Program-made: the position numbers and the translations under genes | Assembly: GCF_036588685.1 (NCBI RefSeq) | Contig: NC_086379.1 | Coordinates: 55,800,001 to 55,864,000 of the forward strand | From: Mytilus trossulus | Lineage: Eukaryota | Reading direction: 5' to 3' | Length of the DNA stretch: 64,000 nucleotides | The notes under the pieces: generated by a model | The model's input: only the letters and a program-made list of their open reading frames with translations | The model's database searches: none | What the model was told of the DNA's origin: nothing | Shown: piece after piece, positions 13,956 through 51,826 of the stretch | Layout: every line of letters starts with the position of its first letter | How positions within the stretch are numbered: position 1 is the first letter of the stretch

Positions 13956-14334
13956 TCAGAAATACTCGACAAACAACATAATCATAAATGATGCAAACAA
14001 AAGTTCTGGTAAGTGCGTTGTTTTAACCGACGAATTCGATGGGTCGTACTTGACAGTTGTCGATTTTGGTATAACAAGTGGACGTTTCGTCGTTTTTGTA
14101 TCTGGCTTTGGTGTTGTAGTAGTAGAAGTGGTAGTAGTAGTAGTTGTTGTTGTTGTTGATGTTGATGTCGTCGTTGTCGGATTCAAGAAGTGTGGTACAT
14201 CGTTTAACCAGAAGTTTACTCTGTCTTGAAAGAGATTAGAGCCGGTTGACATTTGTACCGACATTTTCAGAAATGCTTTGTCGTCTGGTAAATACTGTGG
14301 CCATGTTTGTGTCAGTTGGTCATCATTCGGGTTT
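13956..14334 (-). CDS. Carboxylesterase-like gene A, terminal exon: end of esterase domain (GNPN..WPQY..RVNFW), poly-Thr stalk, GPI-signal-like hydrophobic tail
   Basis: Acceptor ttttag at 14335-14340; gg+a joins in frame to exon 15129-16660; spliced product 636 aa. Confidence 0.9.
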
Positions 14335-14499
14335 CTAAAATGTGTAAAATAAATTTTCATTTAACTTTATTGTTACATCTAACTTTAAATCTTAAAAAGA
14401 TAATATTTTTTATAAAGTCACTATCGCATTGTTCCATTTATACATTATAAAATGTAAGCATTATCTTCGTAAATCAAAAGTAAGAGAACATTAGAAACT

Positions 14500-15020
14500 C
14501 GCAACGTCACGAGATTGATTTTCTCGCTTGAGCTGGGACGGCGAAAGCGAGAAAGGCAATTAGAGTTTAGATGACCAATGATAATCTGTTTATCGCTATT
14601 TTATCTATAACGACGTTGTCAATTTGATGTCAATTTCATTAGCAACGCCACGTGCCTCCTAAGTTTCTATCGTTAATTTTCCCCCGCAATCGAGTAGCAT
14701 GATATGAAAATCTCTCACAAAAAATATCAAAGGAAAAACGCACAAAATAGCGATAAATTATAATTATCGCTAGAAACTAAGGGCGCGTGTGCTGCTGTAA
14801 ATGAAATTTACAACGTCGTCATATATATAAAAATATATTTTATTGTCTAAATATACAATAGAATTGGATACAAGTTATAACAACTTAATAATATAATAGG
14901 TAAAATAGTGATAAATATATTATCAATGGTCATCTCAACTTGATTGCTCTTCTCACTTTCGCCGTACCGGCTCCAGCAAGATAATTATTATCGTTGAGAT
15001 GACCAACGATAATCTATTAT
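14500..15020. mobile_element. Foldback element in the gene A intron
   Basis: Long imperfect inverted repeats (gagctgggacggcgaaagcgagaa...gatgaccaatgataat vs attatcaatggtcatc...ttctcactttcgccgtaccggctc). Confidence 0.65.
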
Positions 15021-15128
15021 CATATAGTAGAAAAGTGAAAGTATTTCCATCTTGTTCCACTCAAAGCATGCGTTTGACTCATTATTTGCAGGCAGAGTTG
15101 ATCTCCATCAATAAGTAAGCATACTTAC

Positions 15129-16660
15129 CCGGTGTTGATGAAGTTGCTGTAATATTTTATAGCAGAGTCTGTAAGAGATATAAGAAAGTCTGGAAACATA
15201 TCAGGGTTAGAACTATGTAAAGATTTTGTCTGCAATAAGTACAACATTCCGTCAACATCGATAGTTCCATTCATCCATTCATTGCCTTGCATAAATGTAT
15301 TTGCTGGCGATAACTCTGACCAGAAAGAAAGATAAACTTCCTTATTTGAATGTGTTTTTAAATGTGTATTCAGTAAATCTGTTACCGGTGCATATGTAAA
15401 GAAATCTCCTATTGCTCTAAGAACATTACGACTTTGCTCTTTTTCATCGCTAGACGAGTACCAGTCGCATATCATTTTTTTAAGGTCGTCTATTTTTGTG
15501 GTTTGATAAAATGGAGAGATGATATTTGGAATGTAATGATTGCACAACACAGTCTTTGGTACCTTCTGGTTTGTTTCAAAGTTATATTGACTTTGTAATG
15601 GTGCTAATTGTTCGTAAACATTGATGAAATTTTCATATTCAGATAACGTGCTCAAAACATCTACAGGTATTAGAGATTTAAAGTCAGTTGCAGGAAGAAT
15701 AAATTCATTGTCGACAACGGGTCCAAAATTATACCAAAATGTGTCCGAATAAGTGGAAACAACACCATTCGCAATGGACCCTTTTTCTAAAATTTCACTT
15801 TCAGTTTTAGACATTAAACAATCATATATTTGCTGTGAAGTAAACACCACACTATTTTGAGACGCATCGGGGCATAACTGATTTGCCAGAGTTTGTGAGT
15901 ATTCTTCTGCTTCTTTCCATATAGCCCCATGTGTATTAGCAACCGTAGAGAAAAGCATGATTCTTTGGAAGTTTCCAAAATTTAAAGGAGTGCTTGCTTG
16001 TAAAGTGGTACATAGTCCAGTAGATTGAAAGCCTCCTAATGTTATCCGAGATGGATCACCACCAAATGCTTGTATATTGGACTTAACCCATTCTATTGCC
16101 ATTTTCTGGTCCCATAATCCAAAGTTTCCAGGAATAACAGAATCCCCAGTTGACAGGAATCCGAACACACCCAATCGAAACGCTACAACTACGTTAATCA
16201 CGTCACCGTACAAAACTAAATCTGACGTTGGTAGAAGTCCTCTCTGACCAGACTCAAATTTTTCACCGGCAAACCAAATAACTACCGATTTGCTAGAAGT
16301 TGTGTCTGACACCGGAACAAATAAGTCTAGTAAAAGACAATCTTCACTTATATCTCCACTTGGGAGAAAATCGACCATCCAGTCGGCAATAACTTGGCTG
16401 CAAATTCTTCCCCCTGTTATTGTGCCGTCTATGATACCTCCCCAAGATTTCAGTGGTTTCGGTTTTTCGAATCTCTTTGGTGGTTCAGCATACGGAATCG
16501 CGATGAAACTTTGCACGGCTATGCCATTTGTATCCATCTGTAAACCTTTAATCTGTCCGAGTTCTGTCGAAACAATCACTTCAGTTGGTAAGCTAATTTC
16601 ACCAAGGGAATACACTGGATACAGCAAAAGAGCAAATAAATTCAAGATTCGTTTATACAT
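15129..16660 (-). CDS. Carboxylesterase-like gene A, main exon: signal peptide + type-B carboxylesterase fold, predicted catalytically dead (Ser->Gln, His->Asp)
   Basis: IPYAEPP, SEDCL, FRLGVFGFLSTGD, GNFGLWDQ, FGGDP motifs; ATG directly after acceptor ttttacag; donor gg|gtaagt at 15128. Confidence 0.93.
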
Positions 16661-17429
16661 CTGTAAAATAGTTAAGTCATACTTTAAAATTTCAGAACTT
16701 CAAGAAACCAAGAGATATAAATTTCATGATATAATTATGTAGGACCAACAAGAAAACGTTTATTCTTAGAAAGCAACTTGCTTGCAATATGAATGGTGTA
16801 AATCGCAACCATGTCTGATAAACTATTTACACTCGGGGAGAAAGAAAAGAAATTGTTAAGCGTTGACTTTTAGCAGGAGAATTTTTCGCAATAGACTGAT
16901 TTCATACTGATGTTGAGTCAAACATCCAGGTATAAAAATTACTAAAGTAATCATGGAAACGCATCTAAAAAAAATAATTCGGTATCTTATTATCACATAA
17001 TTGTCATCAGGGTGCATTACTCTAGAAAAAAAACTTATTAAATCTTTATGATTTACCTTCACTTATTTCACAAAAGAATCTGGCGGGGAAATACTTCAAG
17101 TCACTATCAACGTAAACCTTTTACTCTAACAGTACCAAAATTACACCTACTTCGTTTTTTAGATAGTCATACTATTAAGTAAGTGATTTGGAATGTATTC
17201 ATCATGTATATTAAAATATGAAGATTTTGTATTCCGGGTATAGCATAGTAGGTGCCTAAATCCATGTAAACAAAACAACATAGGAACTGTACAACAACAA
17301 AAAAATCACACATGATCAAAAGCAACAATCAACAATCACTTAATTACAGGCTCCAGCATGTCTTGGGGGCAGACACACATATAATGTGGTGGGGGTAAAA
17401 CATGTTCGCTGGTCCTAATATATATATAT

Positions 17430-18216
17430 CGGCATGGGACGTTTGCGCTTTTCAATGGACATTTGCGCTTTTTTTTGTGGACACTTGCTCTTCAAAACAT
17501 AGGACATTTGCGCTTTTTAAAAATGGACATTTGCGCTTTTTACATAGGACATTTGCGCTTTTTTATATCTTTGACTTCCCAATCTTTTATCCGGGTTTAG
17601 CCAGCAGTGTTAAAGTCATTCTTTATGGTTAAAAGTTTTAAAAATCATTTCATAGCACATTGTTGATGTATGTTTAAAAGTTATGTACAGATAAAAGGAG
17701 ACATTCTAAAGAAATTAAATCAAGTACTGTCATCACAATTACATGTCAGTTTTAGCTTGATATTTGAAGCCCAATGAGTGAACAAATTTTGCTCTTCTTA
17801 TCTGTCCTGATTGGTACTTAGCCTACATCTGAAATAAATGATCGAGCTTCTCATTCTCAATTCTTGATTGGGAAGCCTGTTCATCAATGTACCAAATCTT
17901 TAATATAATTTACTGACTGTTGTTCAATAATGCTCTTCAAAAATATAAAAATGGCAGGATGAGTCATGTAAAACTGTGCATTGTAGTGAGCATGGAAGGA
18001 TTCTGGACCATTTGCTGTACGCTTACTGTATGATGGCTGTTCAGCATATACTATTCTTCTCATTAAGATTACAGGTAGTCGACTATAGGTAAAAAGCGCA
18101 AATGTCCGGTCAGTTTAATACAAGTGAATCAAAATTAAAAGCGCAAATGTCCATAGTATTTGAAGCGCAAATGTCCTATGATTTTACAGGTAAAAAAGCG
18201 CAAATGTCCTGTGCCC
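17430..18216 (-). mobile_element. Internally deleted Mutator-like (MULE) element with transposase relic
   Basis: Inverted ends with repeated GGACATTTGCGCTTT motifs; 17941-18048 minus strand reads KRTANGPESFHAHYNAQFYMTHPAIFIF (MULE RTxNxxESFH..HP motif); splits a dispersed repeat. Confidence 0.75.
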
Positions 18217-19109
18217 AATACATATAGCCCTCTCCTAACCTAGGACAGTCATTATAGCTCTGGTTAGACCAAGCGAACCTGATGCCAAATTACTGTATGT
18301 CACAAGTGTGGTTTTTTCTATGGCAACGCAATTGTGCACATTTTTATACAATGTTGTAGTGTAGCGCCTACAAGAGACTTGTTTTGGATAGATCTGATTA
18401 ATATTGGACCAATTGAGTTTAGCGCAACGCTCTATGCTATGGAAGACATATACTTGAGACTAACTCTACTATCATGTAATAGTGACAAATTTTTCATTCT
18501 TGAAAAATCAGATGCAGACAGTTTCACCCACTCATGTGTAAAGTTTATTTATAGGTTATGCAAGGAATATGACAGTCAACTTGATATTTATCACAACTGA
18601 AAAATATTAAAGACATTTTTCGATTCATCTGAACATTTACTTATCTTTTCTATTTATTCAATGATCTTTTTAATAATTCATTATTATAAATATTTATTTT
18701 TTCTTTTAATTGTTCAAATCGTTATTTAATTTTTTTTATTATTAGCACTCTGTATTATACCACATTTTTATTTATGTTCATGTATATCCATACTCTCCTT
18801 AAGGAGGATAATAAACATATATATATATATAAACTTGTCAACAGCAGCTTTTAAAAAATCAAATCTCTAAACAGGTTATCCCACACTATTTAAGCCGAAC
18901 ATTATCAACACCTTTTATCAACAAATGATATCTTCCGTGCTTATTTGACTTGTGATCCTTTTGTTTTCGTATTAGTACATTTTGATTTTGATCTTTTCGG
19001 TTGCTGTTGTGTTTTTGTTCTCACGTTTTGATTCCATTTTTATTTATGACTGACTGTCAACCATTTCCATTTGTTTAAAAGAAGGTATTATGAGGTAAAG
19101 TCGCATATA

Positions 19110-19403
19110 TCCTACAGCCGATTGCATTCAGTTTGTATGTAAAGGTAATACCTTTGGTTAGCTTGATTGCTAGCTGAACCGTGCATGATTGCTAGCTGAA
19201 CCGTGCATTCATTATTAGGTTAGATAAACTATCATCCTTCAAGAGTAGACTAGTTCGACAGAGAACCAATCTATCTGTCTGTAGGTCTAGGCTACTTCGA
19301 AACGAGCGAAGTGTACTACCTTATAATGACTTCACGGTTCAACTAGCAAGTATGCTAACCAAAGATATTACCTTTACCTACACACTGAGTGCAATCGGAT
19401 GTA
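19110..19403. mobile_element. Foldback MITE
   Basis: ~85-bp imperfect inverted arms (tacagccgattgcattcag...gaaccgtg / cacggttcaact...gcaatcggatgta). Confidence 0.65.
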
Positions 19404-21087
19404 ATTAAGTCAAGCTTTTTGATTTTCATTGATGTCTTATACAAGAATATTTAATGTATTACCTAAAAAAAAATAAGGTGTTATATATGTGAACATAAGC
19501 ATTTACTTTTGACGGAGAAAATCATATTCTATCCGTTTTATTGTTTTTTAAATGTAGACTTGTATTGTTGAAACAAAACCCGTAACAATGATTCTAATAA
19601 CGTGTTACCTCGCATAACATGTTTCATTTCTGAGCAATTTAGTTGTTCACTTTTATTTAACCCACGAAAGATGAATATCATTATTCTACAATATAATTCA
19701 TATATTCTAAATTTTCAACTATAAATTATCAATCTGCTAAAAGTAGGCACCTTGCGCTTTGTTATCGATATAATTATGTGTTAATCCGACAGTAATTGAG
19801 GGGTACAACCAATTAAATACGAAGAAAATAACCTAGACCTACCAATTATTCAAACTTCAGCCTTAATCTAAATTGACCTACAGTATCAATTCAAAACTGT
19901 TTGACCTTCAAATTTTATTGTTCGGTTGTATTTATCAATTGTGGCTGTGTAATGACACCCAATGAGGTTGAAAATCCTCCCTTCCCTTCCATAATCTCTT
20001 TTCACCAATTAGACATATTCTCAGCACAGAAAAGCACCATATGTAGATAAGTGATGTAAACATTATTACTATGACCTTTATACTTATTATTTCAAACAAA
20101 TATAATCGCTAACCTTCACTCATGGGTATTAGAATTTAAGAACTGAATGCTTCGTATTGTTATTGTATATGTTGGTGTGAAAGCGTGACTGAAGGCACAT
20201 TTAGTGCGAGAGGGTGAATAATTTTTGGGTTCAAATTTTAATACAGAAATATTTTTCGTGTATTTTTTTACTTAAATAAGGCCTTTATTTTTCTCGTTCG
20301 AATTGTCTTACAATGTCTTATCGGGGCCTTTTATAGCTGACTACGCGGTATGGGCTTTGCTTATTGTTGAAGGGCGTACGGTGACCTATAGTTGTTAATG
20401 TCTTTTATGGATAGTTTTGTGTCATAGGCAATCATACCACATCTTCTTTTTTTTTTTATATTAAATCAAATACAAGTTATTTTTAATTCCAAATACAACA
20501 TTTATAATTTGACACTTGTATAAAATATGATGGGATAGCACAAAATAAAAAAGAACCGAAATGCTTGATTGAGGACACGCATTGTGTTGTGAATCTTTGG
20601 CTTGGAAGTGTTTTCAGGAACTCTGTTTCAAGCTCTAATAAAATCGGGTTTTTGTTTACAGTATATTTCATATAGTTAGTTTTCTTAGAAACATAATCAT
20701 TGCATGCCACATTTCATCTATTTATGACCCATAAAGAGTGACAAAATAAATTATCAAATGCTTTGAATTTCAGAAAAGATCGAAAGAATTTTCAAACATA
20801 GACCTAGTTGTGAAACTGAATGTGAAAATGACTACTTCTTTCTAGAATGTAATGGAATCATGTAATTTAAATACAGTTAGTAAAATTATCACAGAGGACA
20901 CTTTTTACATTCTTTACATTCTTTACATAAAAACGTTATGATATGCTATGGCTTACTTATTTTGTAAACTCTTCAAATCCAAGCATTTGGGAATGTGTCA
21001 ACAGACATTGTTTTATGCGCTGTATTTTCCATACATTTAAACTAATTGATTGTTGTTTAAAGTCATATGAAACCAGTGATTGGTGAA

Positions 21088-30429: not shown

Positions 30430-30658
30430 CTATGATAATGATAAGCTTGATGCATTTGAGTTATACTTTTTACTATCTGTAACTATAGAAGACTGATCAG
30501 CTGTCGAGTTAAGGAGTTTAGGGATGTCCTTGAGCCAGAAATCTACTCGGTCTTTGTACATGTCTTTGTCAGATGATATGGTAACATCCAAAATCTGATA
30601 AGCTTTGTTACTCTGTGTATAGGGTGACCAGCTTGGAAGTTTCTCATCATTCGGATCT
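30430..30658 (-). CDS. Carboxylesterase gene B, terminal exon (GDPN..WSPY..RVDFW..SSLSLS*), no Thr stalk or hydrophobic tail
   Basis: Acceptor tttttcag at 30659; in frame with donor at 31274; TAG at 30430-30432. Confidence 0.88.
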
Positions 30659-31274: not shown

Positions 31275-32680
31275 CCGTATTTTGCAAAGTTGGTCCAGTA
31301 TTTCATCACAGTTAAGCTTAGTGTTAAATCTTCAGATGTGTTTGAAAGGAAGTCATAAAACGGAAAGAGCAATGGTATTTCTGATGCATGACTTGCTCCT
31401 TCAAACCACAATGGTATTCTTTTGCTGAGGATAGTTCTCTTGGTACTTAAATATTGAAATGTCTTTGATAATGGAGTTCCATCAGAGTGAAAATTTAACG
31501 TTTCAACCGTTTTACTGTAGAAATAAATATCCCCATAATAGTAAACGCTGTTCATACTGCGGTAAAGTCCTAAGGAATAACCATATTTTTGGCAAACAGC
31601 CGGTGCTATTTTAGTGTTGTTGTTGTAGTCGTCCAAAGCCATTGTTGTTGCTAAGTGATTACACAATACAGACCGAGGAATTCCGAGATCTATGTTAAAT
31701 CGGTATGCTTTCTGTAACCTTGTCAACGGATTACCAAGAAGTAAGGAGCCTTCAGAATTAACATTACCAACAATCATGTCCAGTGAACGGAAAAACATGT
31801 AAGCTTCGGAAGACCGGTTCTTCAGAAGAATTTTTGGGTGGTCCATAAGCAAATCTCGGTCTACCCTTGGTGCAAACACGAGAAAATCGTGAGGGTCTGT
31901 AACTGGTAAACTGTACAGGAAGTTGTATGCATTTTGGACATCAGCGGCCGATTTATTTTTCAGACATTTTATTTCTTCAGACTGCTGGGGAGACGTACAC
32001 TTTAAAACGTTTATAATCCTGTTCGTGTAATATGTTATATTAAATTCGGTTGCGACAAAGGAAGTGGAGACTCCGCTTTGTGCAATCACGCGGTTAAATA
32101 AACCTTTATTCTGTGGAATCAGGCTATGTAAAGAAACACTAAAACCGCCGGCAGATTCTCCAAATATAGTAACGTTACTGGTATCTCCCCCAAACGCTTC
32201 AATGTTGTCCTTAACCCATTCAATAGCCATTTTCTGGTCCCAAAGTCCATAATTTCCGACAGCATTTTCGTTCCCAGTACTTAGAAATCCAAAAACACCA
32301 AGACGGTAGTTCACTGTGACAATGATGACGTCACCGACTGATGCCATATATGCACCATTATATAACATTCCTGTGCCAGTAATATATGATCCTCCATGAA
32401 TCCAAATCATTACAGCCTTTTTGGCAGCGGACGACAATTTACTGGTTGGGACGTAGATGTTAAGAAATAAACAATCTTCAGATATGGTATAATTGTTAGG
32501 AATGAATCCACTAACTATTTCGGAAGGTTGTCCCTGAATACAAGCACTTCCAAAATATGTAGCGTTCAATGTTTGATTCCAGGAACCAAACGCAACAGGT
32601 TTTTGAAATCTTAGATCTCCCACTGGTGGTTTCGCAAATGGAATACGCCTGAATTCATTATAAGTGTAGTTTTGAGGACC
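31275..32680 (-). CDS. Carboxylesterase gene B, main exon 3' part: intact catalytic machinery (WIHGG, GESAG, NSEG, GASHASEI)
   Basis: Canonical type-B carboxylesterase motifs; donor gg|gtaggt at 31274; cut off from its N-terminus by a transposon; 582 aa when restored. Confidence 0.92.
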
Positions 32681-33404
32681 AATAACACGGGTGTCATTCG
32701 GTTTATCGAGAGAAATGAGCGTGAAAGAATATCTAACGGCGGTCAAGTATTGAGCGACGATCGTGAAAGCTCTGGTAACGGATCGTGAAAGACATTTAAT
32801 GGAAATTCTAGGTCAGAATCTTTTAAAATATCGCTTAATTTTCAAAACGCGGAACAAATCCAAACAAAAAAATATGTCTGTCAAAATGGTTTAACTTCCC
32901 AAACATTACTGTGAAATAAGAAAGAGAAAATATGCAGTACTTTATGAAAAAACACAAAAGGCGCAATGCATATCTATGAAATTAATTACAAATAACACGC
33001 TTTTTGTTACTATAATGGTCATGTTTCAGTTCATCGTGATATATTTGGAATTTAATCTTTGGTGTATCTGATAGTACAGTAAATTTAAGGTATGTTCTTC
33101 TCTTAAAAGCATTAATTTGTATATGAAAACCTTGAATTTGTTGAATATCCATCAAACTTTATCGTGAAAGATCAGGCAACGCATTATTTTGATCGTGAAA
33201 GATAATGCGTGACCAGACTTATTACTCGTAATCAGAAATCAGTATTTCTTTTACCATTTGATAAACCTGCAACTGGTTGAAACCTGTAACTATATATTTT
33301 GATAAGGATGACATTAAAGCTATTTTTTTTTATTCAACGCTTTACCTCGAAAGTTAAAAGAACAACAACTAAAACATCTCTAAATAAGTTTAGTTTAAAC
33401 ATAT

Positions 33405-33738
33405 TTATTTATAGTGGATTGGGAAACAAGTTTTGCAACTTATATTAATCCCTTTCCACTTTGCGGATGCGAGTGCTGCCTTGTAGCGGCATTAGCCTAC
33501 TCTTTTTCGAAATCTACAAGGGTGTCTTTAACGTGCAAGAGATATGGCTCTCTCTTAACACGGGTCAGCCATTTATTGTCCCCGTCCGACGGACTATCAT
33601 CGTTTCCTCAAGACCATACTCGCAAATGGTGTCAAGGGAGAGCCGAAAATTGATTTCCTGAAATTTTCATCCCAAACGGGAATCGAACCAGGAACCTTTG
33701 TGTAAGAAGTCCGATGCACTAACCACTACACCACGGCT
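33405..33738 (-). mobile_element. tRNA-derived SINE with Deu/Nin-like central domain, nested in the TIR element
   Basis: A box tggtgtagtgg and B box ggttcgattcc; body contains gcacgttaaagacaccc...ttcgaaaaagagtagg; related fragment at ~38495-38570. Confidence 0.75.
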
Positions 33739-34629
33739 TGAAAGATTTAGCTCTGAGAATCGGTCAAGTGCAATTCAGGCAGGCTGACACTATTTACCAA
33801 TAGCCAATAATATGGATATGCAACGTTTAAACCAAAATAATATCCATCAAACAAAAAATTACAGCAAAACAGCATCTTTCATGAGTAATTTGAGATTGAA
33901 CGATGACCAACATTTTGTGCAACAATACTTTCTTAAGTTCTGTATATACAACGCAGATGTGGATTGATTTAACTATATACTACAGACTATAGAATACCAG
34001 ATCGCAAATGCTGTAATGTCTCGTCTGCTTTACTTATGATAGTTAATTTTATGGAACGTCTATAATATCAAGGGTTTTACTAGAAGTGTCAAAATTAATG
34101 CGCTTAATGCGCTTAATGTATTTTTGTCCATCTGATGATTTAAGCCTTTTCAATTGATTTTTATAGTTCGTTCTTATGTTGTACAGTTATACCACTGTCC
34201 CAGATTCGGGGGAGGGTTGGGACCCCACTAACGTGTCTAACCCCGCCACATTGTTAATGTATGTGCCTGTCCAAAGTCAGGAGCCTGTAATTCAGTGGTT
34301 GTTGATTGTTTATGCGATACATTTTTGGTTTTCGTTTTTTTTTTTTTATACAAATAAGGCCGTTAGTTTTCTCGTTTGAATTGTTTTACATTGTCACTAT
34401 GGAGGCCTTTTATAGCTGACTAATAAATAAATCACTTCCAATTACTTTGCTATCTAATATCAGATTTTCTATATTTTTTAATGAATAGATATAACTTTAC
34501 ATGTACAAATATCTAAGTCGATGGAATATTATCCAACTCAACGAAAGGTGGGGAGAATCAGAGACGGTAAGGGCTTGAATTATTCGAGTTATATTTTACC
34601 CAAGCCTTTATATTAAGTTCTTAAAACTT

Positions 34630-34890
34630 ATTAATTAACTCTAGCATGTCTAGCTGTAGAATTTATAAATCAATGTAGCCGTAGAATTTATAAATTAATT
34701 CTGGCCGTATAGAATTTATAAAAGCTGTTCTAGAGTAGAACTGCCAGGATCAGTTCTAGGTAGAACTGTCCAAATCAGTTCTAGGTAGATCTGGCCAAAT
34801 CAGTTCTAGTTAGAACAGTTCTAACCTAGAACTGACTAAAAGGTGTCAGACTGACAGTTCTATGTACTGTTCTAGAACAGTTCTCCTGAC
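34630..34890. repeat. Short direct/inverted repeat patch (tagaatttataaa; cagttcta/tagaactg)
   Basis: Iterated motifs resembling subterminal repeats of another element. Confidence 0.6.
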
Positions 34891-35860
34891 AGATTTAATG
34901 AGAGGTTAGAAGTGATCTCCACTGTATATATCCAAAGGCTAGACAACATAAAACGAGCATTGCAGAAAGATGTATGAAAATGGGTTCAATGTCAGTTGAA
35001 ACCTTGCAGAAGTCGAAAATGTACACCTCACAATCATAACAACAGACACTTGTCCTAAAGCTTAACGAATCCGCGATACGGACTTGACCACAAAAATGAA
35101 TCTTCATCCATGAAATAAGGCAAATTCGGGGTCAGGTGAATCCTGTCTGGCGGACATGTAGTTTATAGGATCCAATATACCAAATGTGGGTATCCTATAC
35201 TTTATATTTATACTTTGAAAAGCTTAAACCTATTGAGGATGTTGAACTATATAGCTTTTCTCAATACCAATAACAAATATTAACTATGATATAATTGAAG
35301 AATAATTTGAACGTCTTCGTAGCATCGGGTCTTTCGCGATCCTTTTCACGATCTTCAAAAATACGGTATGTGATCTTTCACGATCCAAAAAAATCCATTT
35401 TTGTGTAATAGTTCTTTATTTACCAAGTTTCAGATTATGTTTATGCAAAATAACTATAAGAACCATTTGATTAATTCAAATAGAATGCCCTTATTCGTAT
35501 TAAACTAGGTTTTCTAGTCGAATTTGTGAAAAAATCATGTTTGTTTACATTTTTTATGTCATTGAAATATCGAGAAGCAATCTGCCTTTTGTTGTTTTGT
35601 AATAACTATGTACTTTTAAAACTCGATATTCTCACATACTAATCATAATGTTGAACCATTTTGACAGACAGTGTTATTTTGTCGTAAATTTGCTTCTGTA
35701 ATTTATTAAATTATAATATGTATTGACCTTTCATATGTCTTCTCGATTAAATGTCTTTCACGATCCGTTACCAGAACTTTCACGATCGTCGCTCAATACT
35801 TGACCGCCGTTAGATATTCTTTCACGCTCATTTCTCTCGATAAACCGAATGATACCCGTG

Positions 35861-35974
35861 AATAACCTTAGACTGGTGCAAGCCAGTTATTTTTCCTATT
35901 GGAGTATCTATGGTTACCGTGTTCTGACAAACTGCAAGCGACACATACATAACAAAAATGAGTAAATGCAGCAT
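35861..35974 (-). CDS. Carboxylesterase gene B, N-terminal 38 codons (signal peptide MLHLLIFVMYVSLAVC, then QNTVTIDTPIGKITG)
   Basis: Acceptor tttcag at 35985-35990; typical V-x-T-x-x-G-x-I-x-G start of the fold; in frame with 32680 once the transposon and one TSD are removed; not in the ORF track. Confidence 0.9.
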
Positions 35975-36214: not shown

Positions 36215-36456
36215 TAATTAAGAATTGAATGCTTCTTTTTGTAACTTTATTGGGTTGTAAAAGCGTTGACAAAAGTACATTTTGTATGAAGCGCTGAAGC
36301 ACTTCGTTCTAAAAATGTGCACACGGTCATCGCTTTTACAACCCTATAAAGTTACAAAAAGAAGCATTCAATACTTATAATTACATGTTTAGCTACTAGA
36401 ATCATGAAAACACGAATTTTATATAAAAAAATATTTAATTCACCTGTGCACTTTAT
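36215..36456. mobile_element. Hairpin-plus-tail repeat, copy 2 (tail truncated)
   Basis: Same palindrome as 12536. Confidence 0.8.
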
Positions 36457-40010: not shown

Positions 40011-40137
40011 TTTACACAAATGTCTCCAAATTTTTTTTTCATGGATAAAGAAAATTTTGATGTACCTGTAGAAACCCGAGTTTATCATCAGCCAATTAGT
40101 AAGTATTGCTGCGTTTACATGAATTATCATTAATATG

Positions 40138-41528: not shown

Positions 41529-41565
41529 TTAAGTTAAGTGATACAGGTAAAGACAAATGGTTTAT

Positions 41566-41992
41566 TCAGGATTTATATAATAGAACAATCTGGATTATTA
41601 ACAGAATACCCTTTACCAGACTGAATCTAATTGTAACAGATGCATTCACAGGGTCCGGTGCGATGGTTGCTACATCTAATTTTGGAAGAACAAGTGGTTG
41701 TTTTGTAGTTTTTGATAGTTGTTTTGATGGTGTTGATGTTGGTGTTGTTGTCGCTGTTTTTGCTGTTGTTTTTTTAGATAGTACTGTCGTTTTTACTGGT
41801 TGTAATGTTTGTAGTGGTTGTTCTATTGAGTCGGTTGGTACCGGTGAAAGATAAAGATATTCTTCATTAAGCCAGTAATACACCCTGTCCTCGAATAGAA
41901 AAGAACCTGTGGTTGGCTGTAGCTTCATTTGGATATATTCTTCATCGTCTGCAGTGTATGGTGGCCATATTTGTGCGTTAGAATTTGGGTTT
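41566..41992 (-). CDS. Carboxylesterase-like gene C, terminal exon (GNPN..WPPY..RVYYW, Thr/Lys-rich stalk, GPI-signal-like tail)
   Basis: Acceptor tttttcag at 41993; in frame with donor at 42944; spliced product 653 aa; AATAAA overlaps the TGA. Confidence 0.9.
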
Positions 41993-42423: not shown

Positions 42424-42985
42424 TGAAATACTACTTGAAATACTCACCCTGTTTTGATGAAATAACTGTAAATTTGTGTAGTGGAGTCAGAAATGAAATA
42501 CTACTTGAAAATATTCACCCTGGTTTAATGAAGTTACTGACCATTTGTATAGTGGATTCAGAAATGAAATACTACTTGAAAACACTCACCCTGTTTTGAT
42601 GAAGTTACTGTACATTTGTATAGTGGATTCAGAAATGAAATACTACTTGAAAACACTCGCCCTGTTTTGATGAAGTTACTGTACATTTGTATAATGGATT
42701 CAGAAATGAAATACTACTTGAAAACACTCACCCTGTTTTGATGAAGTTACTGTACATTTGTATAGTGGATTCAGAAATGAAATACTACTTGAAAATACTC
42801 GCCCTGTTTTGATGAAGTTACTGTACATTTGTATAGTGGATTCAGAAATGAAATACTACTTGAAAACACTCGCCCTGTTTTGATGAAGTTACTGACTATT
42901 TGTATAGTGGATTCAGAAATGAAATACTACTTGAAAATACTCACCCTGTTTTGATGAAGTTACTGTACATTTGTATAGTGGATTC
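42424..42985 (-). repeat. 71-bp minisatellite (8 units) made of gene C's exon end + splice donor + intron start
   Basis: Donor positions recur every 71 nt: 42944, 42873, 42802, 42731, 42660, 42589, 42518, 42447. Confidence 0.95.
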
Positions 42986-44479
42986 TGCAAATGCTATAAG
43001 TTCTTGTGAAATAGCAGCTGGATCAATCGTTTGATAAGATTTAATTGCTAGTAAATATACAAGTGCGTCATTTTGGACAGTTCCGTCCATCCAGGTCAAA
43101 CTTGTGAGTATATCATCCAGTGGCGATTTTTGAGACCAAAGGCAAAGATAATTATTTTCACCGAGATTATAGTCGGTATGATCGTACATCAGCTCCGAAA
43201 TTGGTACATAATTATAAAAATCTCCAATTAATCTTAAAACATTACGGCTTTGTTCTGTGACGTCACTTGAGGTGTATCGATTGCATATGTTATTTATCAT
43301 CTGCTGTTTATTTTCTGGTGGCAAATGAGACTCAGCAATGGTTGGGACAACAACATCGCAAAGAACGGATTTCGGAATGTTCTTTGTTATGTCAAAATTG
43401 TATTGTGTTTGATAAGGAATTAGCTGTTCGTAAACCTTAAGTGCATGTTCGTTTTCAGATACTGTTGTCAATAGATCAACGGGTAGGATCTCTGTAAAGT
43501 AAAGATCTTTAATAAAATCGTTATCAAAAACTGGTCGAAAATCAAATTCAAGTTTCAATTTAGAAAACCCATTCGCGGTATCCACTGCTGTTTTTGTCTC
43601 ACTTATTAATTCTGCTTCAGTTTTAGAAGTTAAACAGTCATAAATTTCCTTAGATTGCAACCTAAATTTTGAATTGCTTGGACATAAAGCTCTTGTTAAA
43701 GCTCTCGCAATTGACATTATGAAGTCAAAGTTTTCCCCAACGACATTTCCATACAAATGAGAAACATCGGAATAAATCAAAAGTCTTTGAAAATTTCCGT
43801 CATTTAATTTATGATGTGCTTGTAGAGTGGCAGATACTGCACCGGCACCGAATCCTGCAAGTGTGATTTGATCAGAATCGCCTCCAAAGGCATTTATATT
43901 TGCTTTTATCCATTCTATTGCCATTTTCTGATCCCATAATCCAAAATTTCCAGGAATAAAAGAATCACCAGTTGAAAGGAATCCAAAAACACCTAATCGA
44001 AACGCTACAACTACGTTAATCACGTCACCGTACAAAACTAAATCTGACGTTGGTTGAAGTCCTCTCTGGCCAAACTCGAAGTTGTCTCCTGCAAACCATA
44101 TAACTACTGCTTTTTTGGTGATAATTTTTGTATTTGATACCGGAACGAATACATCTAGTAAAAGACAGTCTTCACTGACATCTGTACTTGGAAGAAAGCC
44201 TGCTAACTCTGGAACTATAGCTTGGCTGCATATTTTTCCTCCTGGTTGTGTGCAGTCTTTTGTGCCTACCCAAGATTTTACTGGTGTTGGTTTCTTGAAT
44301 CTTTCTGGGGGTTCAGCATAAGGAATTCCATAGAAACTTTGAAGAAACATGTTATTTATAGACGTGGACACTCCTTCTACACTCCCCGTTGTTGTTGTAG
44401 CAACCACAGTATTCATGCTTGATTGACTTTTAGACAACATAGGATACAACACAACCAAAAACACAACTCGAAAAAACAT
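42945..44479 (-). CDS. Carboxylesterase-like gene C, main exon; predicted catalytically dead (Ser->Gly in GFGAG, His->Gln)
   Basis: GIPYAEPP, SEDCL, GNFGLWDQ, FGGD motifs; ATG directly after acceptor ttccag; donor gg|gtgagt. Confidence 0.93.
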
Positions 44480-45045: not shown

Positions 45046-46234
45046 TTACTGTTTTATTTTGTGTCATAGATGAATATCCCATATCCTTTGCGTTTCTATG
45101 GTATAATTAGAAGCGTGTAATGATGAAACATTTTTACGATGTGAAATGTGGACTTAAAAGTCAGAAAAAAAAATGTATTAACCTTTTCCACATGCTTGGT
45201 AACTAACTTGGATGGTTTATTGGTTGTTAAAAACGTCAGGTATTAATGTCACAAAAAATAGTACCAATTCTAATGAACTATTTATGAATAAGCACAATAC
45301 CTTATTTGGCCACAACCTGTTTGACGCACACGAGTTAAACAATCGCTGGGTTCCAGTTTACACAATACCACCCTCGCCCTTTTTTCTAGATTGAAAAAAC
45401 AAAAAAAATCTTAGTTATCTGTGTATCTGTTTGTGGGCTGTAGTTTCTTGTGCGTCTTTTAGTTTTGTTTTTATCATTTGTTGATCTGTTGGTATCTATC
45501 TGTTCCCCAATTTCTATAGGTATTTGATTATTTCTATTGTTTGAATGAATGATGAACATCTGTTTTTACTTAGCTATTCAGTCATGTTATTAAATATTTA
45601 CGATTATAAACAGTCCTTATAAATATATATACTTCTGTTCAGAAAGAAAAAGCTTTACGTCTGATCCTAAAAATATCATTAGTTATCATACAATATGCTC
45701 TATTTTCGGTGAATGAGCATAGGCAAATCAGTACGCAGAGTTTCTAGTCTCTTTATATGCATATTTTAATTTCAGATAGCGAAAAAAACTGCAGTTTAAC
45801 CTCTTTGATTTCTTGTCTACATAGTGTAGTACTGTGTAGTAGAAATTACTTTTTTATTTGAAACTCATCTCTTATTGGTTATTGGAAACATAATTTATGC
45901 AAATTTAAGAATCGGTAATCATCCACTTAAAATTGGGAATGGTTGATATTTGGGTCAAGAAGCCAAAAAACTTCATTTAAAAAAAAAGTTATATTGAACA
46001 AGATTTAAAAAGTATGCTAAAAAAATATTTTTGATTTTTTTTTTAAAAAATCAAAAATTTTAGGTTAAGAATAAAAACATAATAATTGGGTGATAGATCA
46101 GTCATCACGAATACTTTCCCGACTCCTTTTAAATTATATCAAAAGAGAACGGAAATATTTGAAATAATATCAAAAAAAATCATCTTTATTTTATATTGAA
46201 TATACATGTGCACATATATACGACATTACCGGAC

Positions 46235-46445
46235 TTGCATTTCCTATCATGATTTCCCAGAAAAAGTGTTACTGCTTTAAATGAAGCTATTGAAACAAGA
46301 ATTCAAAGTGCGTTTCTTCGAAAATTTTACGAACGGCATCACGAGTTGGTTGACAGGTATAGAATATCTGTTTCACAAATGACGACTGATATGTTTCTTT
46401 TGTCTTTACCATAATTTCGTCCACTTTTCCTCGAATTTGATCTAC
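46235..46445 (+). mobile_element. Penelope-like element 3' ORF relic
   Basis: Reads LRKFYERHHELVDRYRISVSQMT, resembling the C-terminal part of mollusc PLE ORFs. Confidence 0.6.
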
Positions 46446-48750
46446 AACACTATATTTATCTCCTGGTTTGAACTTAATAAGTCAGCAAACATTCGTATCC
46501 CTGCCACATTCTGTACATGCCTATCCCAAGTCAGGAGCATGTAATTCAGAGGGTGTCGTTAGTTGCTGTATCTCATATTTGTTTTTCGTTCATTGTTATG
46601 CACATAAATCAGACTGTTATGTTTTTTCGTTTGATTTGCTTTATATTTGTCATTTCGCGGACAATGTGGTATGGGTTTTGATCATTATTGAAGACCATTC
46701 GGTGGCCTATTGTTGTAATCTTCTATTTCATTTGGTCTCTGTCGGAGAATTATTTCATTGGCAATGAAACCACATCTTCTTAATACCATTTAACATGTAC
46801 AAACATTTTATTTTAAATTTTAACATTAAGATGCATACTTAGTTATGGAACTTTTTTGCTTACCTTCGTGTTTTGAATAAACTCGAAAAGAAATGTCACC
46901 CGAACTTTGAATTTTTATCCCAATTTGATAACCGTATCGCATGAAGGCCTAACAATAACAACCAGCATGACTGAAGTTTATCCAAGGCTTAAATTTATAT
47001 TGTGTTGGTACTGGTTTATATGTATTTTTCTCATTAAAACATTGAAACATGACTTATTTACACTAATACACAGTAAAGGTATGACAAAAGATCTTTGGTT
47101 GTGGGGACGGGTATATAGCGTTTGGTTCAACAAACAAGAACCGTATCAGTGGACTATATATAGTTCAAAATGGTTATCAAAAGTATAAAGCAATCAACTT
47201 TACAATTAAAATAGTATAATATCATTATAAACTTAATATAGATTTTAAGACTATTTCCATCTATAATATTTACGCCTCCTCAGTAGCATTCGAGTTAAAA
47301 GTTCTGGTGTTTTCTGTCTGTGTATATCACTGTTATAGACACAATAACTAGTAATTGGTTCGATTCTGTAGATCTTGTATCATTGTATTTCTACTCGGCT
47401 TTAAATCCTATCAACTACTAAGTATATTTTTGTTAAAAACTGGGTATTTTTCAGAGGATGTGTGATACCCTACAAAAAATAGTTTCATGCCCTCTCCCTT
47501 TTTCTCCAAAACAAATTGTCAGTATCTGAGTTTGATGTGTTTCACAAGAACGATGCAATACAATTTAAAACTCATTTTTATGAAACTGTTGTTGTGATAT
47601 TTTATAGTTTGTAGATACTATTCGTTTTTGAATAAAAAAAAACATGTTTAAACTAAAATGTCAGGTGTAAAAACATTGAAAATTGTAAAACGATCATTTA
47701 GAAATAGCTGCGTTCAAAGGCCAAACACGGGATCCCTACAGTTAAATATACTGTATTCTGGTAGACATATTAAGATACAAAGGTACATAGAAGAACATTT
47801 ACATATACACTAACATAAAAGTACATAGATTGGGGTAAAACAAAACAATAAGAAGAGCAAAGCTACACAAATATGTTAACCTGCTATAAAAGTATACAAT
47901 GTATATTAAATTGAAAACTTTAAAATATGAGAGAGGAGGGGGACATCCAATAACTACGTTTATGATTTAAATTAATTTACTCAAAATGAACTTAGATTTT
48001 TATATTGTTAGATAAGTTCCCTTAATTTTATAATGACACTCTTTCGTAAATTTTGTATCTAGTTATTCGAGCTCAAGTCATATAATTATATAAAAGACAT
48101 GATTGCCTTGCATAAAGTTTTTTAACATTAGATAATAGTCTGTTTTTTTAAGTAAGTATTACATGGAACTGTTTTAAACTTAAATAAACACAATTATCTA
48201 AATATTTCTTTAGATGATATACATATTTAGACAAAGAAAATATCTTTTACATAGTATTTCTGAATATCATGTGTTTGGAGAACGACATAAAAAAATTAGC
48301 AAAATTTCTTTCCAAACTGAGTGTTTTGAATATCTAATTATTGAAAACAGTTGTTCTTTTGTTTATTACCAATATTTCTGGACGTGGAGTATTTTAGACA
48401 GCAAGGGCAATTGCCCAGTGTATTCTTAGAGATCTATAATACAATAGCTGAATTCAAAATTAACCAGAACAATCCATATGTAGCTCAGTACAGACTTTGT
48501 GCTTGGTATATACAATAAGACCAATGATAAGGATCGTTGAAGCCTCTACTTTTCAAAATTTAATGCATTGTCTTATAATTTTGCAATTAGCTAAAGTAAA
48601 GCATAATCCATTACCTATCATAGATGCCATCATGGTACTCAAATATCAAACAAATGCGTGTATCTAGTGTCTCATATTTTTTCAAGTTAACCCATAGTTT
48701 TGAGACGTTTTAGCAAGAGTTACGTAATATCAAAATTAGACAAAAAAAGT

Positions 48751-49168
48751 TTAGACGTAATTAACAATAAGGATAAAAGGAATGGTTAATAGTACACGAA
48801 GGTCAGACTTTAAAATGTTCATGTGATTGTTAAGGCTTTCTGTGCTGGTTTCAGTTATGGTTTCGGTGATGGTTTCACTTGTTTCTCTTGTTGCTATCTT
48901 CTTGATGGTCATGTCTGACACAGTGCTAATTTGTTGAGGGCAATGGGTGGAAGTAATTGGCATCCGTTCTGACGTTGATGTCAAATTTGTACGAGGGATG
49001 CCAAGAAAATCTGGAACAGTCTCCATCCAAAACTGCATGCGGTCTTTATACAAACTATGCTCTTTGTGTATACTGAAGTTGCTACTAAAATGCATATAGT
49101 ACTGGTTTCTGATATCATATACAGGCCAGATTTTCAAGGACTCGTCTGCAGGACAAGGATTAGGGTTT
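48751..49168 (-). CDS. Carboxylesterase-like gene D, terminal exon (GNPN..WPVY..RMQFW, Thr/Ser/Glu stalk, GPI-signal-like tail)
   Basis: Acceptor ttacag at 49169; in frame with donor at 50330; spliced product 637 aa. Confidence 0.88.
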
Positions 49169-50330
49169 CTGTAATTAAATATAAAAGGATAAAAATAACA
49201 TTTATGTAAAAGTAAATATCAAACAATTCAAACATAAAAATGTAAAACTATACATTATTTATGTCATGCGTCCTAATCGCTTTTTCCTATTTATCTTCTT
49301 CGAGAACGCTTAAAACCAAATTTTTGAAAATCTTTATTTTGAATTTAAAATTTTGACTTTTGAAATCTCTAATTTCATTTTTTTCTATTCAAACACAGTT
49401 TAATACTATTCTGGAAGGAGTGGACATGGAAGCAAATAATTAAATTATATTCAAAAATGTTTTTTTATTCAATCATTACATGGATTAGCATTTAATATTA
49501 AAGAGTTCATTCGGTATAAGAACATGAATGTTGACAGAAAAAAATGTTGTTTCCCATGTTTTAGTTTCTACGACACTGTGATATTAAGTCGAAATTTCAA
49601 GGTACTAAAAGTCAATAGTAAGAACTTTGAGTTAAAGTCGATATTTTCAGATTTGAAAAACAAGTTTTTTTATGTGTACTATATCCCTAATACGCTTCCG
49701 TAGATGTCTTTTGTCCCTTAATCAATAACGAATCATAAAGCTATGATTTCACAAAAAAACAGACTTTATCAAAACCAATAACTTGGGATGAATAATGAAA
49801 ATTACAAACTGTAAACAATGTGATACCACTAGATAATAAATCATTCGAATTCAAAATACCAAACTGCATAACAGCAAAGAAAAGCAATTGTGATTGTATA
49901 CACTGTTGTTAAATTTGAGCATTTGGAAAATCTTAATGACTGTCAATTCACCACATATTTTTTGAGGATCCTACTTGATTGAACCAGTAAAACCTCCATC
50001 GACTTTGTCTCAGTATATTTTTTTATAAAGTCAGAATTTTACAGCATTAAAGATACAGACAACATAATCTTTGTAATGTAATCATGTCACTGAGCCGGAA
50101 GGATTTGCGCATGCCTTTCTGTACTTGTCTTTTTCAAAGTTTAAACTATCTTATTACCTACATTTACACGTATTATACTATAAAATTGAGAATGGAAATG
50201 GGGATGTGCCAAAGAGACAACAAACAACCTGACCATAGAGCAGACAACAACAGAAGGTCACCAACAGGTCTTCAATGCAACGAAAAATTCCCACGCCCGG
50301 AGGTGTAAATATATTTGATTTGATTCGTAC

Positions 50331-51826
50331 CCATAAACAACAAAATTACTCCAGTACTTCATGAATGTATCTCCCAGATTTGTTTCTTCTGCCTTGAAGG
50401 AGAATCCATAGTCTATGTTGATATCTTTCAATGATAAATATATAGTCGTTGTACCCGGCGAGGGTACCATGTTCCACACACTTTGAGCAAGATTGTCCAC
50501 AGGGTTGACAGCTGAAAACAATCCTAAAAATCTGCTGTTTTCAGTATTTGTCAAGTCATGGATTTTCAGCATATTTATGATAGGCGAATAATACAAGATA
50601 TCCCCGATCAGCCTAACAGCATCCCTGCTCTGTTCCACGGAATCACTTTTTGTATAAAAATTGCAAATTAGGTCTTTAAGGTCTTGTCTATTTTCAAAAA
50701 ATAGACTAACAATATGTGTAACTATTTTGTTACAAAGCACATCTTTTGGGACACCTTCGTTGACATTTATGTTGTATTCATTTTCAATTTCAGAGACAAA
50801 GGTCGTGAACTTTATCATTCCTTCGGCTGAAACACACAGACTTAAAACATCCACGGGGAGAATGGCGTTAAAATTTGCTGTTTCTGAAATGAAATCGTTA
50901 TCAATAACAGGACCCACAGCAAATCTCAATGATTTCGATGTTGGATAGATGCTATTTACTGCATCTAGAAGTTCTGTAGCTGGTTTTCTTACAAGACAAT
51001 CGTAAATTTGTTGTGACGTAAAATTAAAATCTCCAGACGACGTAGCTTGACAAGAGTGTTTTGCTAGCTTTTGAGCAAATTCTTCTGCATCTGTAACAAT
51101 AGCTTCCTTTGAATCCGGGAAACCTGAATGTACTATAATACGATGGATTTTGTCCTTGTTTAAAGAATGTGCTACCTGTAACCCGACAAATAAAGCACCG
51201 ATTTTTAGACCAGTCAATGTAATTCGGAAAGGGTCACCACCAAAAGCATGGATGTTTTCATTGACCCATTCTATAGCCATTTGTTGATCCCACAGACCAA
51301 AATTCCCAGGAATGACGTTATCTCCTGTCGACAAAAAACCAAATATATCAACTCTGAAAGAAACATACACAAATATAGCATCGCTGTATAACCCTAAGTA
51401 TTTAAAAAATGTATAAACTGATGTTTGTGCGGTTCGAAAATCTCCTGGTATCATTATGACAACGGGCTTTTTGTTGTGTTCTGATAAAGATCTTGGGACA
51501 TAAATATCAACGTATAGACAGTCCTCGGTGAGTTCTGAGTTTTGAAGCTGTTGTTTCAATTGGTCAGAAATAGCCTGCATACATAGTTTTCCTGGGTTCA
51601 TTGCATTCAATGTAGAGTTCCATTTATTAGACATTTTTTGTGGTTTCTTGAACCTTTCAGGCTGCTCTGCATACGGAACTCCATAAAATCGATAGATTTT
51701 CGCTCCATTGAATGGTATTTCCTTACCCATTACTACACCAGATGGCGTGTTAACAGTTACTGGAATTTGACAATTCAGTGTGTCAAAAAGAATAGCAATA
51801 ACTACTATCTCAAAAACACGTAACAT
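50331..51826 (-). CDS. Carboxylesterase-like gene D, main exon; predicted catalytically dead (Ser->Lys in GLKIG, His lost)
   Basis: GVPYAE, TEDCL, GNFGLWDQ, FGGDP motifs; ATG directly after acceptor tttcag; donor gg|gtacga at 50330 (ORF track reads into the intron). Confidence 0.92.

What the first reader, a model, noticed from the sequence alone, without database searches (positions are those of the whole stretch)
13956..51826. Cluster of three GPI-type, mucin-stalked pseudo-esterases around one secreted true esterase
Seen, from an ungapped alignment: the nucleophile elbow is GESAG in B but GFQST (A), GFGAG (C) and GLKIG (D), i.e. Ser->Gln/Gly/Lys. The oxyanion HGG becomes AGE/AGD/PGD, and the catalytic His (GASH) becomes D/Q/P. 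Yet A, C and D are intact 636-653 aa ORFs with signal peptides, Thr-rich stalks and hydrophobic C-termini with no cytoplasmic tail. Loss of catalysis and presence of an anchor match across all four genes. Established: dead cholinesterase folds serve as adhesion or ligand-binding modules (neuroligin, neurotactin, gliotactin, glutactin), but those are transmembrane or secreted. Inference: a lineage-specific family of GPI-anchored alpha/beta-hydrolase-fold receptors or adhesion/scavenger proteins with diversified pockets.
Basis: partly seen in the sequence, partly recalled or inferred. Interest (0 to 1): 0.85.

Follow-up and report, generated by a model that had tools for sequence, protein, structure and literature searches.

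The report
Anchored dead esterases in a mussel
Three neighbouring mussel genes encode carboxylesterase-fold proteins that lost their whole catalytic machinery long ago yet have been kept intact, probably as lipid-anchored cell-surface binding proteins on a sugar-coated stalk; this is a modest new variation on the known theme of "dead" cholinesterase-like surface proteins.

Summary
The window (Mytilus trossulus, G000:C7:55.80-55.86 Mb) holds four same-strand type-B carboxylesterase genes.

A, C and D are two-exon genes of 636, 653 and 637 aa, equal to RefSeq models. They lack the nucleophile Ser, the His and the oxyanion glycines. B keeps all three.

- Of the 30 best paralogues in this genome, only A, C and D are dead.
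- They form a fully supported clade with orthologues in four other Mytilus species, plus more distant relatives that are also dead.
- The dead motifs are near-invariant within each orthogroup, the reading frames are intact, and A-C dN/dS is about 0.4.

So these are maintained pseudo-enzymes. Each has a signal peptide, a disordered Thr/Ser/Pro-rich linker and a GPI-type C-terminal hydrophobic signal.

Several catalytically intact paralogues carry the same tail, one with a Ser-rich stalk, so the anchor is common among active relatives and likely predates the loss. The genes are not neuroligin orthologues.

In this assembly B's first coding exon is split by a 3.2 kb high-copy TIR transposon.

I rate this a new variant of a known kind, of moderate interest.

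The parts
15129..16660 (-). Gene A exon 1: signal peptide plus most of the dead esterase domain. Oxyanion AGE at 16262-16270, elbow GFQST at 16019-16033 (Gln for Ser at 16025-16027), retained acid Glu at 15632-15634, Asp for His at 15257-15259.
13956..14334 (-). Gene A exon 2: end of the domain, Thr-rich linker (about 14004-14204; 39% Thr, 61% T+S+P), candidate omega site N-S-S, hydrophobic tail 13959-14003, stop codon 13956-13958.
35861..35974 (-). Gene B, 5' part of the original first coding exon: start codon, signal peptide and first strand. It ends at the transposon junction.
   Evidence: orthologues P0030 and P0140 run straight through this point
32681..35865 (.). Non-autonomous DNA transposon inside B's coding exon. 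It has 118-nt terminal inverted repeats (32686-32803 and 35743-35860, 97% complementary), ends reading CACGGG, and a 5-bp target duplication TTATT.
   Evidence: At least 40 near-identical TIR copies were scored out of 808 candidates in the genome.
31275..32685 (-). Gene B, remainder of the large exon with intact catalytic residues: HGG at 32390-32398, GESAG at 32147-32161, Glu at 31751-31753, His at 31388-31390.
30430..30658 (-). Gene B last exon: end of the domain and a short polar C-terminus with no hydrophobic tail, so the product is predicted to be secreted.
42945..44479 (-). Gene C exon 1: AGD at 44084-44092, elbow GFGAG at 43841-43855, Glu at 43448-43450, Gln for His at 43073-43075.
   Evidence: identical to P0005
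41566..41992 (-). Gene C exon 2: T/S/P-rich linker (about 41611-41868), candidate omega site N-A-S, hydrophobic tail 41569-41610, stop codon.
50331..51826 (-). Gene D exon 1: PGD at 51440-51448, elbow GLKIG at 51197-51211, Glu at 50822-50824, Pro for His at 50456-50458.
   Evidence: identical to P0125
48751..49168 (-). Gene D exon 2: T/S/P-rich linker (about 48796-49023), a less canonical omega region, hydrophobic tail 48754-48795, stop codon.

Best explanation
A, C and D belong to a mytilid-restricted clade of type-B carboxylesterase-fold proteins. The clade lost the nucleophile Ser, the His and the oxyanion-hole glycines before it diversified. It arose inside the molluscan carboxylesterase radiation, in which many still-active members already carry a signal peptide, a linker and a GPI-type C-terminal signal.

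The dead copies have been kept under purifying selection. They most likely work as non-enzymatic binding modules, held above the cell surface on a disordered, probably O-glycosylated Thr/Ser/Pro-rich stalk and tethered by a lipid (GPI) anchor. The former active-site region is the likeliest binding surface: it is fixed within each orthogroup but differs between A, C and D.

Shown here: the fold, loss of the catalytic residues, clade membership, conservation, and the sequence features of leader, stalk and tail.

Inferred: GPI attachment, O-glycosylation, surface display, and a binding or adhesion role.

B is an ordinary secreted active-type paralogue from a different subclade.
For: Fold and loss of catalysis:
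- Pfam COesterase, E 1e-81 to 1e-90.
- AlphaFold model of A has pLDDT 85.5, with the domain mostly above 90. It matches cholinesterase, neuroligin and Ces2 structures at TM 0.81-0.86.
- Catalytic Ser, His and the oxyanion glycines are replaced in A, C and D but intact in the other 27 paralogues examined.

Clade and age:
- The dead motifs are near-invariant within each orthogroup across M. trossulus, galloprovincialis, edulis, coruscus and californianus; the only differences are in M. coruscus D.
- (D,(A,C)) is a 100% SH-aLRT clade on a long stem.
- With the additional relatives P0006-P0011, all 14 members are dead. Their elbow residues are Q, G, K, E and M.
- Per-domain profile scores are 557-1002 bits for clade members against at most 430 for everything else in 1.84 billion representatives.

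Constraint:
- No stops or frameshifts in any orthologue.
- A-C dN/dS is 0.39 at dS 1.1.
- In a neutral simulation, the observed 12-14.5% amino-acid divergence would leave an open frame in under 1% of cases per gene.

Anchor and stalk:
- Terminal hydrophobic stretch of 12-15 residues with 0-5 residues after it.
- Small-residue omega candidates 8-9 residues upstream in M. trossulus A and C (6-14 across their orthologues).
- Linkers of 67-86 aa with 38-61% T+S+P, modelled as disordered with pLDDT below 50.
Against:
- The domains evolve about twice as fast as B's, so constraint is relaxed.
- GPI attachment rests on rule-of-thumb inspection only, and D lacks a canonical omega+2 residue in M. trossulus.
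- No ligand or partner is known.
- Orthologue-level dN/dS could not be computed because no orthologue DNA was available.
Confidence: 0.6

Rival explanations
1. A, C and D are decaying, functionless gene relics that merely still look intact.
For: All catalytic elements are lost. The domains evolve about twice as fast as B's. No expression evidence was obtained here.
Against: - Intact two-exon frames, leaders, cysteines and tails in up to five species for each of the three genes.
- A deep clade whose distant members are also intact and dead.
- A-C dN/dS of 0.39.
- In a neutral simulation, P(no stop) is below 0.01 at the observed divergence.
Confidence: 0.07
2. They are still hydrolases that use substitute residues, for example the Ser next to the elbow apex in A.
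For: The catalytic acid Glu is retained in all of them. A has Ser and Thr directly after the apex residue.
Against: - His and the oxyanion glycines are gone in all three.
- C (GFGAG) and D (GLKIG) have no Ser, Cys or Thr in the elbow pentapeptide.
- The apex residue differs across the clade (Q, G, K, E, M), which is not what a conserved alternative nucleophile would look like.
Confidence: 0.08
3. They are mussel neuroligins (synaptic adhesion molecules), as one RefSeq name suggests.
For: P0001 is named neuroligin-4-like. Neuroligin structures are among the top fold matches. The layout of dead domain, stalk and membrane tether is shared.
Against: - There is no transmembrane helix followed by a cytoplasmic tail.
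- BChE, AChE, Ces2 and neuroligins match equally well.
- The trees place the clade inside the molluscan carboxylesterase radiation.
- The gene structure (one large exon plus one small one) is that of the local carboxylesterase paralogues.
- The clade is restricted to mussels.
Confidence: 0.03
4. They have the same non-catalytic role, but the C-terminal hydrophobic segment is a tail-less transmembrane anchor, or is simply cleaved to give a secreted protein, rather than being a GPI signal.
For: No GPI predictor was available. D lacks a canonical omega+2 residue. The best 19-residue hydropathy windows reach 1.4-2.5.
Against: The hydrophobic stretches are only 12-15 residues long, interrupted by Q or E, sit at the extreme C-terminus without basic stop-transfer residues, and are preceded by small-residue triplets at GPI-typical spacing in A and C.
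Confidence: 0.15

Closest known systems
Neuroligins (cholinesterase-like adhesion molecules)
   Same: Cholinesterase-fold ectodomain without a working triad, a Ser/Thr-rich stalk, and a membrane tether. Structural match at TM about 0.82.
   Different: Neuroligins have a transmembrane helix and a cytoplasmic tail. A, C and D end in a short hydrophobic GPI-type signal. They arose independently inside the molluscan carboxylesterase radiation and are confined to mussels.
GPI-anchored acetylcholinesterase (H-form; PMC5943944)
   Same: Same fold family, with a C-terminal peptide that gives a GPI anchor.
   Different: AChE-H is a fully active enzyme. A, C and D lack Ser, His and the oxyanion hole.
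Catalytically intact, anchored molluscan carboxylesterase paralogues (e.g. L005, L026, L013/P0192, L027/P0188, P0014, P0177, P0025)
   Same: Same gene structure, signal peptide and hydrophobic C-terminal tail. P0192 and P0173 also have Ser/Thr-rich linkers.
   Different: They keep GxSxG, His and HGG. The dead clade sits apart from them on a long stem.
Insect glutactin, gliotactin and neurotactin; thyroglobulin ChEL domain (PMC5943944)
   Same: Non-catalytic members of the same fold, used for adhesion, binding or chaperoning.
   Different: Different lineages and different anchoring (secreted, transmembrane, or part of a giant precursor). None is known to me as GPI-anchored (own knowledge).

Membership tests
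Type-B carboxylesterase/lipase fold (Pfam PF00135) | Profile match above the gathering score, and the cholinesterase fold | tested here: met
   Bits 275-388 against a cut-off of 27. AF2 model with pTM 0.83. Foldseek E about 1e-40 to ChE, NLGN and Ces2.
Type-B carboxylesterase/lipase fold (Pfam PF00135) | Nucleophile Ser in the G-x-S-x-G elbow | tested here: not met
   A has Q, C has G, D has K. B keeps S.
Type-B carboxylesterase/lipase fold (Pfam PF00135) | Catalytic His and oxyanion-hole glycines (HGG) | tested here: not met
   His is replaced by D, Q and P. HGG is replaced by AGE, AGD and PGD in A, C and D. Both are intact in B and in 27 other paralogues (oxyanion as HGG in 24, F/YGG in three).
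Type-B carboxylesterase/lipase fold (Pfam PF00135) | Catalytic acid Glu and conserved disulfide cysteines | tested here: met
   Invariant E and C columns across all 17 Mytilus sequences.
Neuroligin | Single transmembrane helix followed by a cytoplasmic tail with a PDZ-binding end | tested here: not met
   The hydrophobic segment is terminal, with 0-5 residues after it.
Neuroligin | Phylogenetic nesting within the neuroligin orthogroup | tested here: inconclusive
   No bona fide neuroligin sequence was available for the trees. The clade groups with molluscan carboxylesterases rather than the cholinesterase outgroups, at moderate support (SH-aLRT 86) in one tree and unresolved in the other. PDB sequence E-values are alike for BChE, NLGN4, AChE and CES.
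GPI-anchored protein | N-terminal signal peptide plus a C-terminal hydrophobic segment of about 12-20 residues with no cytoplasmic tail | tested here: met
   Rule-based inspection only. N- and C-terminal helices outside the domain in the model.
GPI-anchored protein | Omega site of small residues (omega, +1, +2) about 8-12 residues before the hydrophobic segment | tested here: inconclusive
   A (N-S-S) and C (N-A-S or N-S-S) fit in all species. D fits only in M. coruscus (N-N-N), not in M. trossulus. No dedicated predictor was available.
GPI-anchored protein | Lipid anchor shown by PI-PLC release | not testable with these tools
   Needs a bench experiment.
Mucin-like stalk | Thr/Ser/Pro-rich, disordered linker | tested here: met
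   67-86 aa. T+S+P is 61% in A, 40% in C and 38% in D. pLDDT is below 50 over residues 584-636 of the A model. O-glycosylation itself was not testable.
Pseudogene | Stops, frameshifts or loss of splice sites | tested here: not met
   Clean GT-AG phase-2 introns and open frames. Orthologues are intact. Neutral expectation.

The most novel reading that the evidence does not exclude
Mussels independently re-invented the neuroligin layout (dead cholinesterase-fold head, glycosylated stalk, membrane tether), but on a GPI anchor. They keep three or more diverged paralogues as cell-surface receptors or scavengers for small esters, amines or toxins, or as adhesion molecules of exposed epithelia or haemocytes. 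The acidic residue that replaces an oxyanion glycine in nearly every clade member would be part of a new binding site.
Probability: 0.4. Interest if true: 0.55.

Novelty: new variant of a known kind. Interest (0 to 1): 0.4.

Why it matters
Non-catalytic cholinesterase-fold proteins are a textbook case of enzymes turned into binding modules, but the well-studied examples are few. This clade would be an independent, datable origin of that switch, with active anchored relatives in the same genome for comparison. That makes it a convenient natural experiment on how a pseudo-enzyme is retained.

There is also a practical point. RefSeq names these genes carboxylesterase 5A-like, cocaine esterase-like, acetylcholinesterase-like, bile salt-activated lipase-like or neuroligin-4-like. 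Mussels are ecotoxicology sentinels in which esterase genes and activities serve as biomarkers, so counting these three as esterases or cholinesterases would be wrong.

Tried and rejected
No orthologue DNA was available, so there is no orthologue-level dN/dS and no direct synteny check.
- **JGI metagenome scan.** One scan with a clade profile returned only distant esterases (29-42% identity) and none of the P0006-type relatives.
- **Literature.** Searches found no paper on this clade, nor any mention of its UniProt accessions.
- **Profile search of 1.84 billion representatives.** It was dominated by fused multi-domain gene models, so I re-scored per domain. Other dead domains, such as those in P0153, score below the active paralogues and are not part of this clade.
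- **Paralogue dN/dS.** Only A-C and C-D gave values (0.39 and 0.21); C-D is close to synonymous saturation and A-D and every pair with B are fully saturated.
- I obtained the coordinates from alignment columns instead.
- **Spliced models.** Exons were joined only inside scripts, from window coordinates. Searches used exon 1 by reference, or the database proteins P0122, P0005, P0125 and P0136.
- **Idea rejected.** I rejected the idea that anchor and loss of catalysis are linked.
Full report
**What is there.** The window is AT-rich animal DNA. The minus strand carries four large open exons, and each matches Pfam COesterase PF00135 at E 1e-81 to 1e-116. Homology searching identifies the organism as a Mytilus mussel. 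Model C is identical to the M. trossulus RefSeq protein P0005, D to P0125, and A to P0122 apart from a 14-residue N-terminal extension in the RefSeq model. The genome search places the window at G000:C7:55800001-55864000.

**Gene models.** A, C and D each consist of one large exon and one small exon. They are joined at the same phase-2 intron, just after the conserved Gly that precedes the N-P-N motif, with GG|GT donors and AG|A acceptors. B shares this intron. I joined exons only inside scripts, from window coordinates. For the search tools I used exon 1 by reference, or the identical database proteins.

**The catalytic residues.**
- In a four-way alignment, a 30-paralogue alignment and a 17-sequence orthologue alignment, B has HGG, GESAG, the acid Glu and His.
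- A has AGE, GFQST and Asp at the His position. C has AGD, GFGAG and Gln. D has PGD, GLKIG and Pro.
- An HMMER alignment to butyrylcholinesterase puts A's Gln exactly opposite Ser198, and GEK opposite the GGG oxyanion loop.
- The acid Glu is invariant in all 17 sequences.
- Of the 30 best carboxylesterase paralogues in this genome, only these three have lost the residues, so this is not chance.

**Fold.** An AlphaFold2 model of A, built from a 79-sequence alignment, has mean pLDDT 85.5 and pTM 0.83, with the esterase domain mostly above 90. Foldseek matches neuroligins, butyryl- and acetylcholinesterase and mouse Ces2 about equally (E about 1e-40, target TM 0.81-0.86, 23-25% identity). Sequence comparison with PDB chains shows the same lack of preference. 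The RefSeq name 'neuroligin-4-like' for the M. galloprovincialis orthologue therefore carries no specific information.

**Evolution.**
- Orthologues of A, C, D and B exist in M. galloprovincialis, M. edulis, M. coruscus and M. californianus. Runs of adjacent accession numbers suggest the cluster itself is conserved.
- The substituted motifs are near-invariant within each orthogroup and differ between them; the only differences are in M. coruscus D.
- In a maximum-likelihood tree, (D,(A,C)) is a 100% SH-aLRT clade on a 0.59 stem. It groups with molluscan carboxylesterases rather than the cholinesterase outgroups (SH-aLRT 86), and B sits in another subclade.
- Unnamed Logan/ENA/JGI proteins P0006-P0011, 36-46% identical to A, belong to the same clade and are also dead. 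Their elbow residues are E, Q and M.
- A profile of the clade run against 1.84 billion representatives, re-scored per domain, shows a clear gap: 557-1002 bits for clade members and at most 430 for everything else.
- The clade is therefore narrow, and the loss of catalysis predates its diversification. Crown-to-tip depth is roughly ten times the distances between Mytilus species.

**Constraint.**
- Domain identity between M. trossulus and M. galloprovincialis or M. edulis is 92-94% for A, C and D, against 96-97% for B. Against M. californianus or M. coruscus it is 85.5-88%, against 93.5-94% for B. This is about a two-fold faster rate.
- Nei-Gojobori analysis of the window's own A and C gives dN 0.43, dS 1.10 and a ratio of 0.39. 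Of the other pairs, C-D gave 0.21 at a near-saturated dS of 3.3; the remaining four are fully saturated.
- In a uniform neutral substitution simulation, the roughly 13% amino-acid divergence seen for each gene corresponds to about 0.06 changes per site. At that level the frame stays free of stops in under 1% of trials. All three genes are open in every species.
- These are maintained genes, not relics.
- A proper orthologue dN/dS needs mRNA sequences that I could not fetch.

**Leader, stalk and tail.**
- Each protein starts with a short basic stretch followed by a hydrophobic leader.
- After the domain comes a linker of 67-86 residues. Thr is 39% in A, 19% in C and 21% in D; T+S+P is 61%, 40% and 38%. 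The A model shows this linker as disordered, with pLDDT below 50 at residues 584-636.
- Each ends in a hydrophobic stretch of 12-15 residues with 0-5 residues after it.
- A and C have small-residue triplets (N-S-S, N-A-S) 8-9 residues upstream in M. trossulus (6-14 across the orthologues) in every species, which is the usual GPI signal layout. D is less canonical in M. trossulus.
- I had no GPI predictor, so attachment is inferred.

**The anchor is not tied to loss of catalysis.**
- Among M. trossulus paralogues whose last exon lies within the fetched flank, L005 and L026 are catalytically intact and end in the same kind of hydrophobic tail.
- L027 and L013 are near-identical to P0188 and P0192. 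Both have intact motifs and hydrophobic tails, and P0192 also has a Ser-rich stalk.
- P0014, P0177, P0186, P0197 and the scallop protein P0025 behave the same way.
- Anchored active members are scattered over the tree.
- The stalk-and-anchor architecture is therefore widespread in molluscan carboxylesterases and likely older than the dead clade. The 'match across all four genes' is a single phylogenetic event plus a coincidence of the window.
- GPI-anchored AChE-H is also an established member of the fold (PMC5943944).

**Gene B.**
- B's real start codon is at 35974. After 38 codons the reading frame runs into an insertion bounded by 118-nt inverted repeats (35860-35743 and 32803-32686, 97% complementary), which start CACGGG and are flanked by a TTATT duplication.
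- Orthologues, and the M. trossulus RefSeq model P0136, read straight across the junction.
- The repeat arm occurs at 98-100% identity in at least 40 scored places out of 808 candidates in the genome, so this is a recent insertion of a high-copy element.
- No canonical splice sites excise it exactly. A cryptic GT...AG pair would leave a 19-residue in-frame insertion.
- I could not test whether the insertion is heterozygous.
I had found both independently before looking them up.

**Most likely mechanism.** A dead esterase head is displayed on a glycosylated stalk from a lipid anchor and acts by binding rather than catalysis, in the manner of cholinesterase-like adhesion molecules (PMC5943944). 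The between-paralogue diversity and within-orthogroup fixity of the former active-site residues fit paralogue-specific binding sites. So does the acidic residue that replaces an oxyanion glycine in nearly every clade member. The number of sites is too small for a test, and no ligand can be named.

**Not done.** The literature searches found nothing on this clade.

**Verdict.** It is wrong on the anchor-loss coupling, and its novelty is overstated. I rate it a new variant of a known kind, of moderate interest.

Noticed in passing
window 32681-35865: A 3.2 kb non-autonomous DNA transposon sits inside B's first coding exon. It has 118-nt TIRs starting CACGGG and a 5-bp TTATT target duplication. 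The TIR occurs at 98-100% identity in at least 40 scored places of 808 candidates genome-wide. The RefSeq model and the orthologues read across the empty site.
   Followed up: partly
window 42424-42993: The intron of gene C begins with eight tandem 71-bp units (93% matches). Each unit copies the last codons of exon 1 plus the splice donor, so several candidate donors follow the real one.
   Followed up: partly
window 52609-57240: Long satellite arrays: a 25-bp unit with a 149-bp higher-order period, about 157 copies. They show strong positive GC skew (0.30-0.45) just upstream of gene D.
   Followed up: no
window 61116-62377 (+): Open exons with protein-kinase motifs (a glycine-rich loop and an HRD-type catalytic loop). 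This looks like an unrelated Ser/Thr kinase gene next to the cluster.
   Followed up: no
G000:C7:69.37-69.50 Mb (L004-L006, L013, L016, L017, L020, L022, L027): A second, larger tandem array of at least ten catalytically intact carboxylesterase genes on the same chromosome-scale contig. Some of them (L005, L013, L027) have GPI-type tails.
   Followed up: partly
window 36219-36377 and about 39662: A short 52-nt inverted-repeat pair with a 55-nt spacer. A similar short ORF recurs 3.4 kb away, which suggests a MITE-like repeat.
   Followed up: no
P0153, P0170, P0180: Long fused gene models from unnamed organisms hold several carboxylesterase domains with non-Ser elbows. These are other independent dead lineages outside this clade, and some have a transmembrane segment with a short tail.
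   Followed up: no
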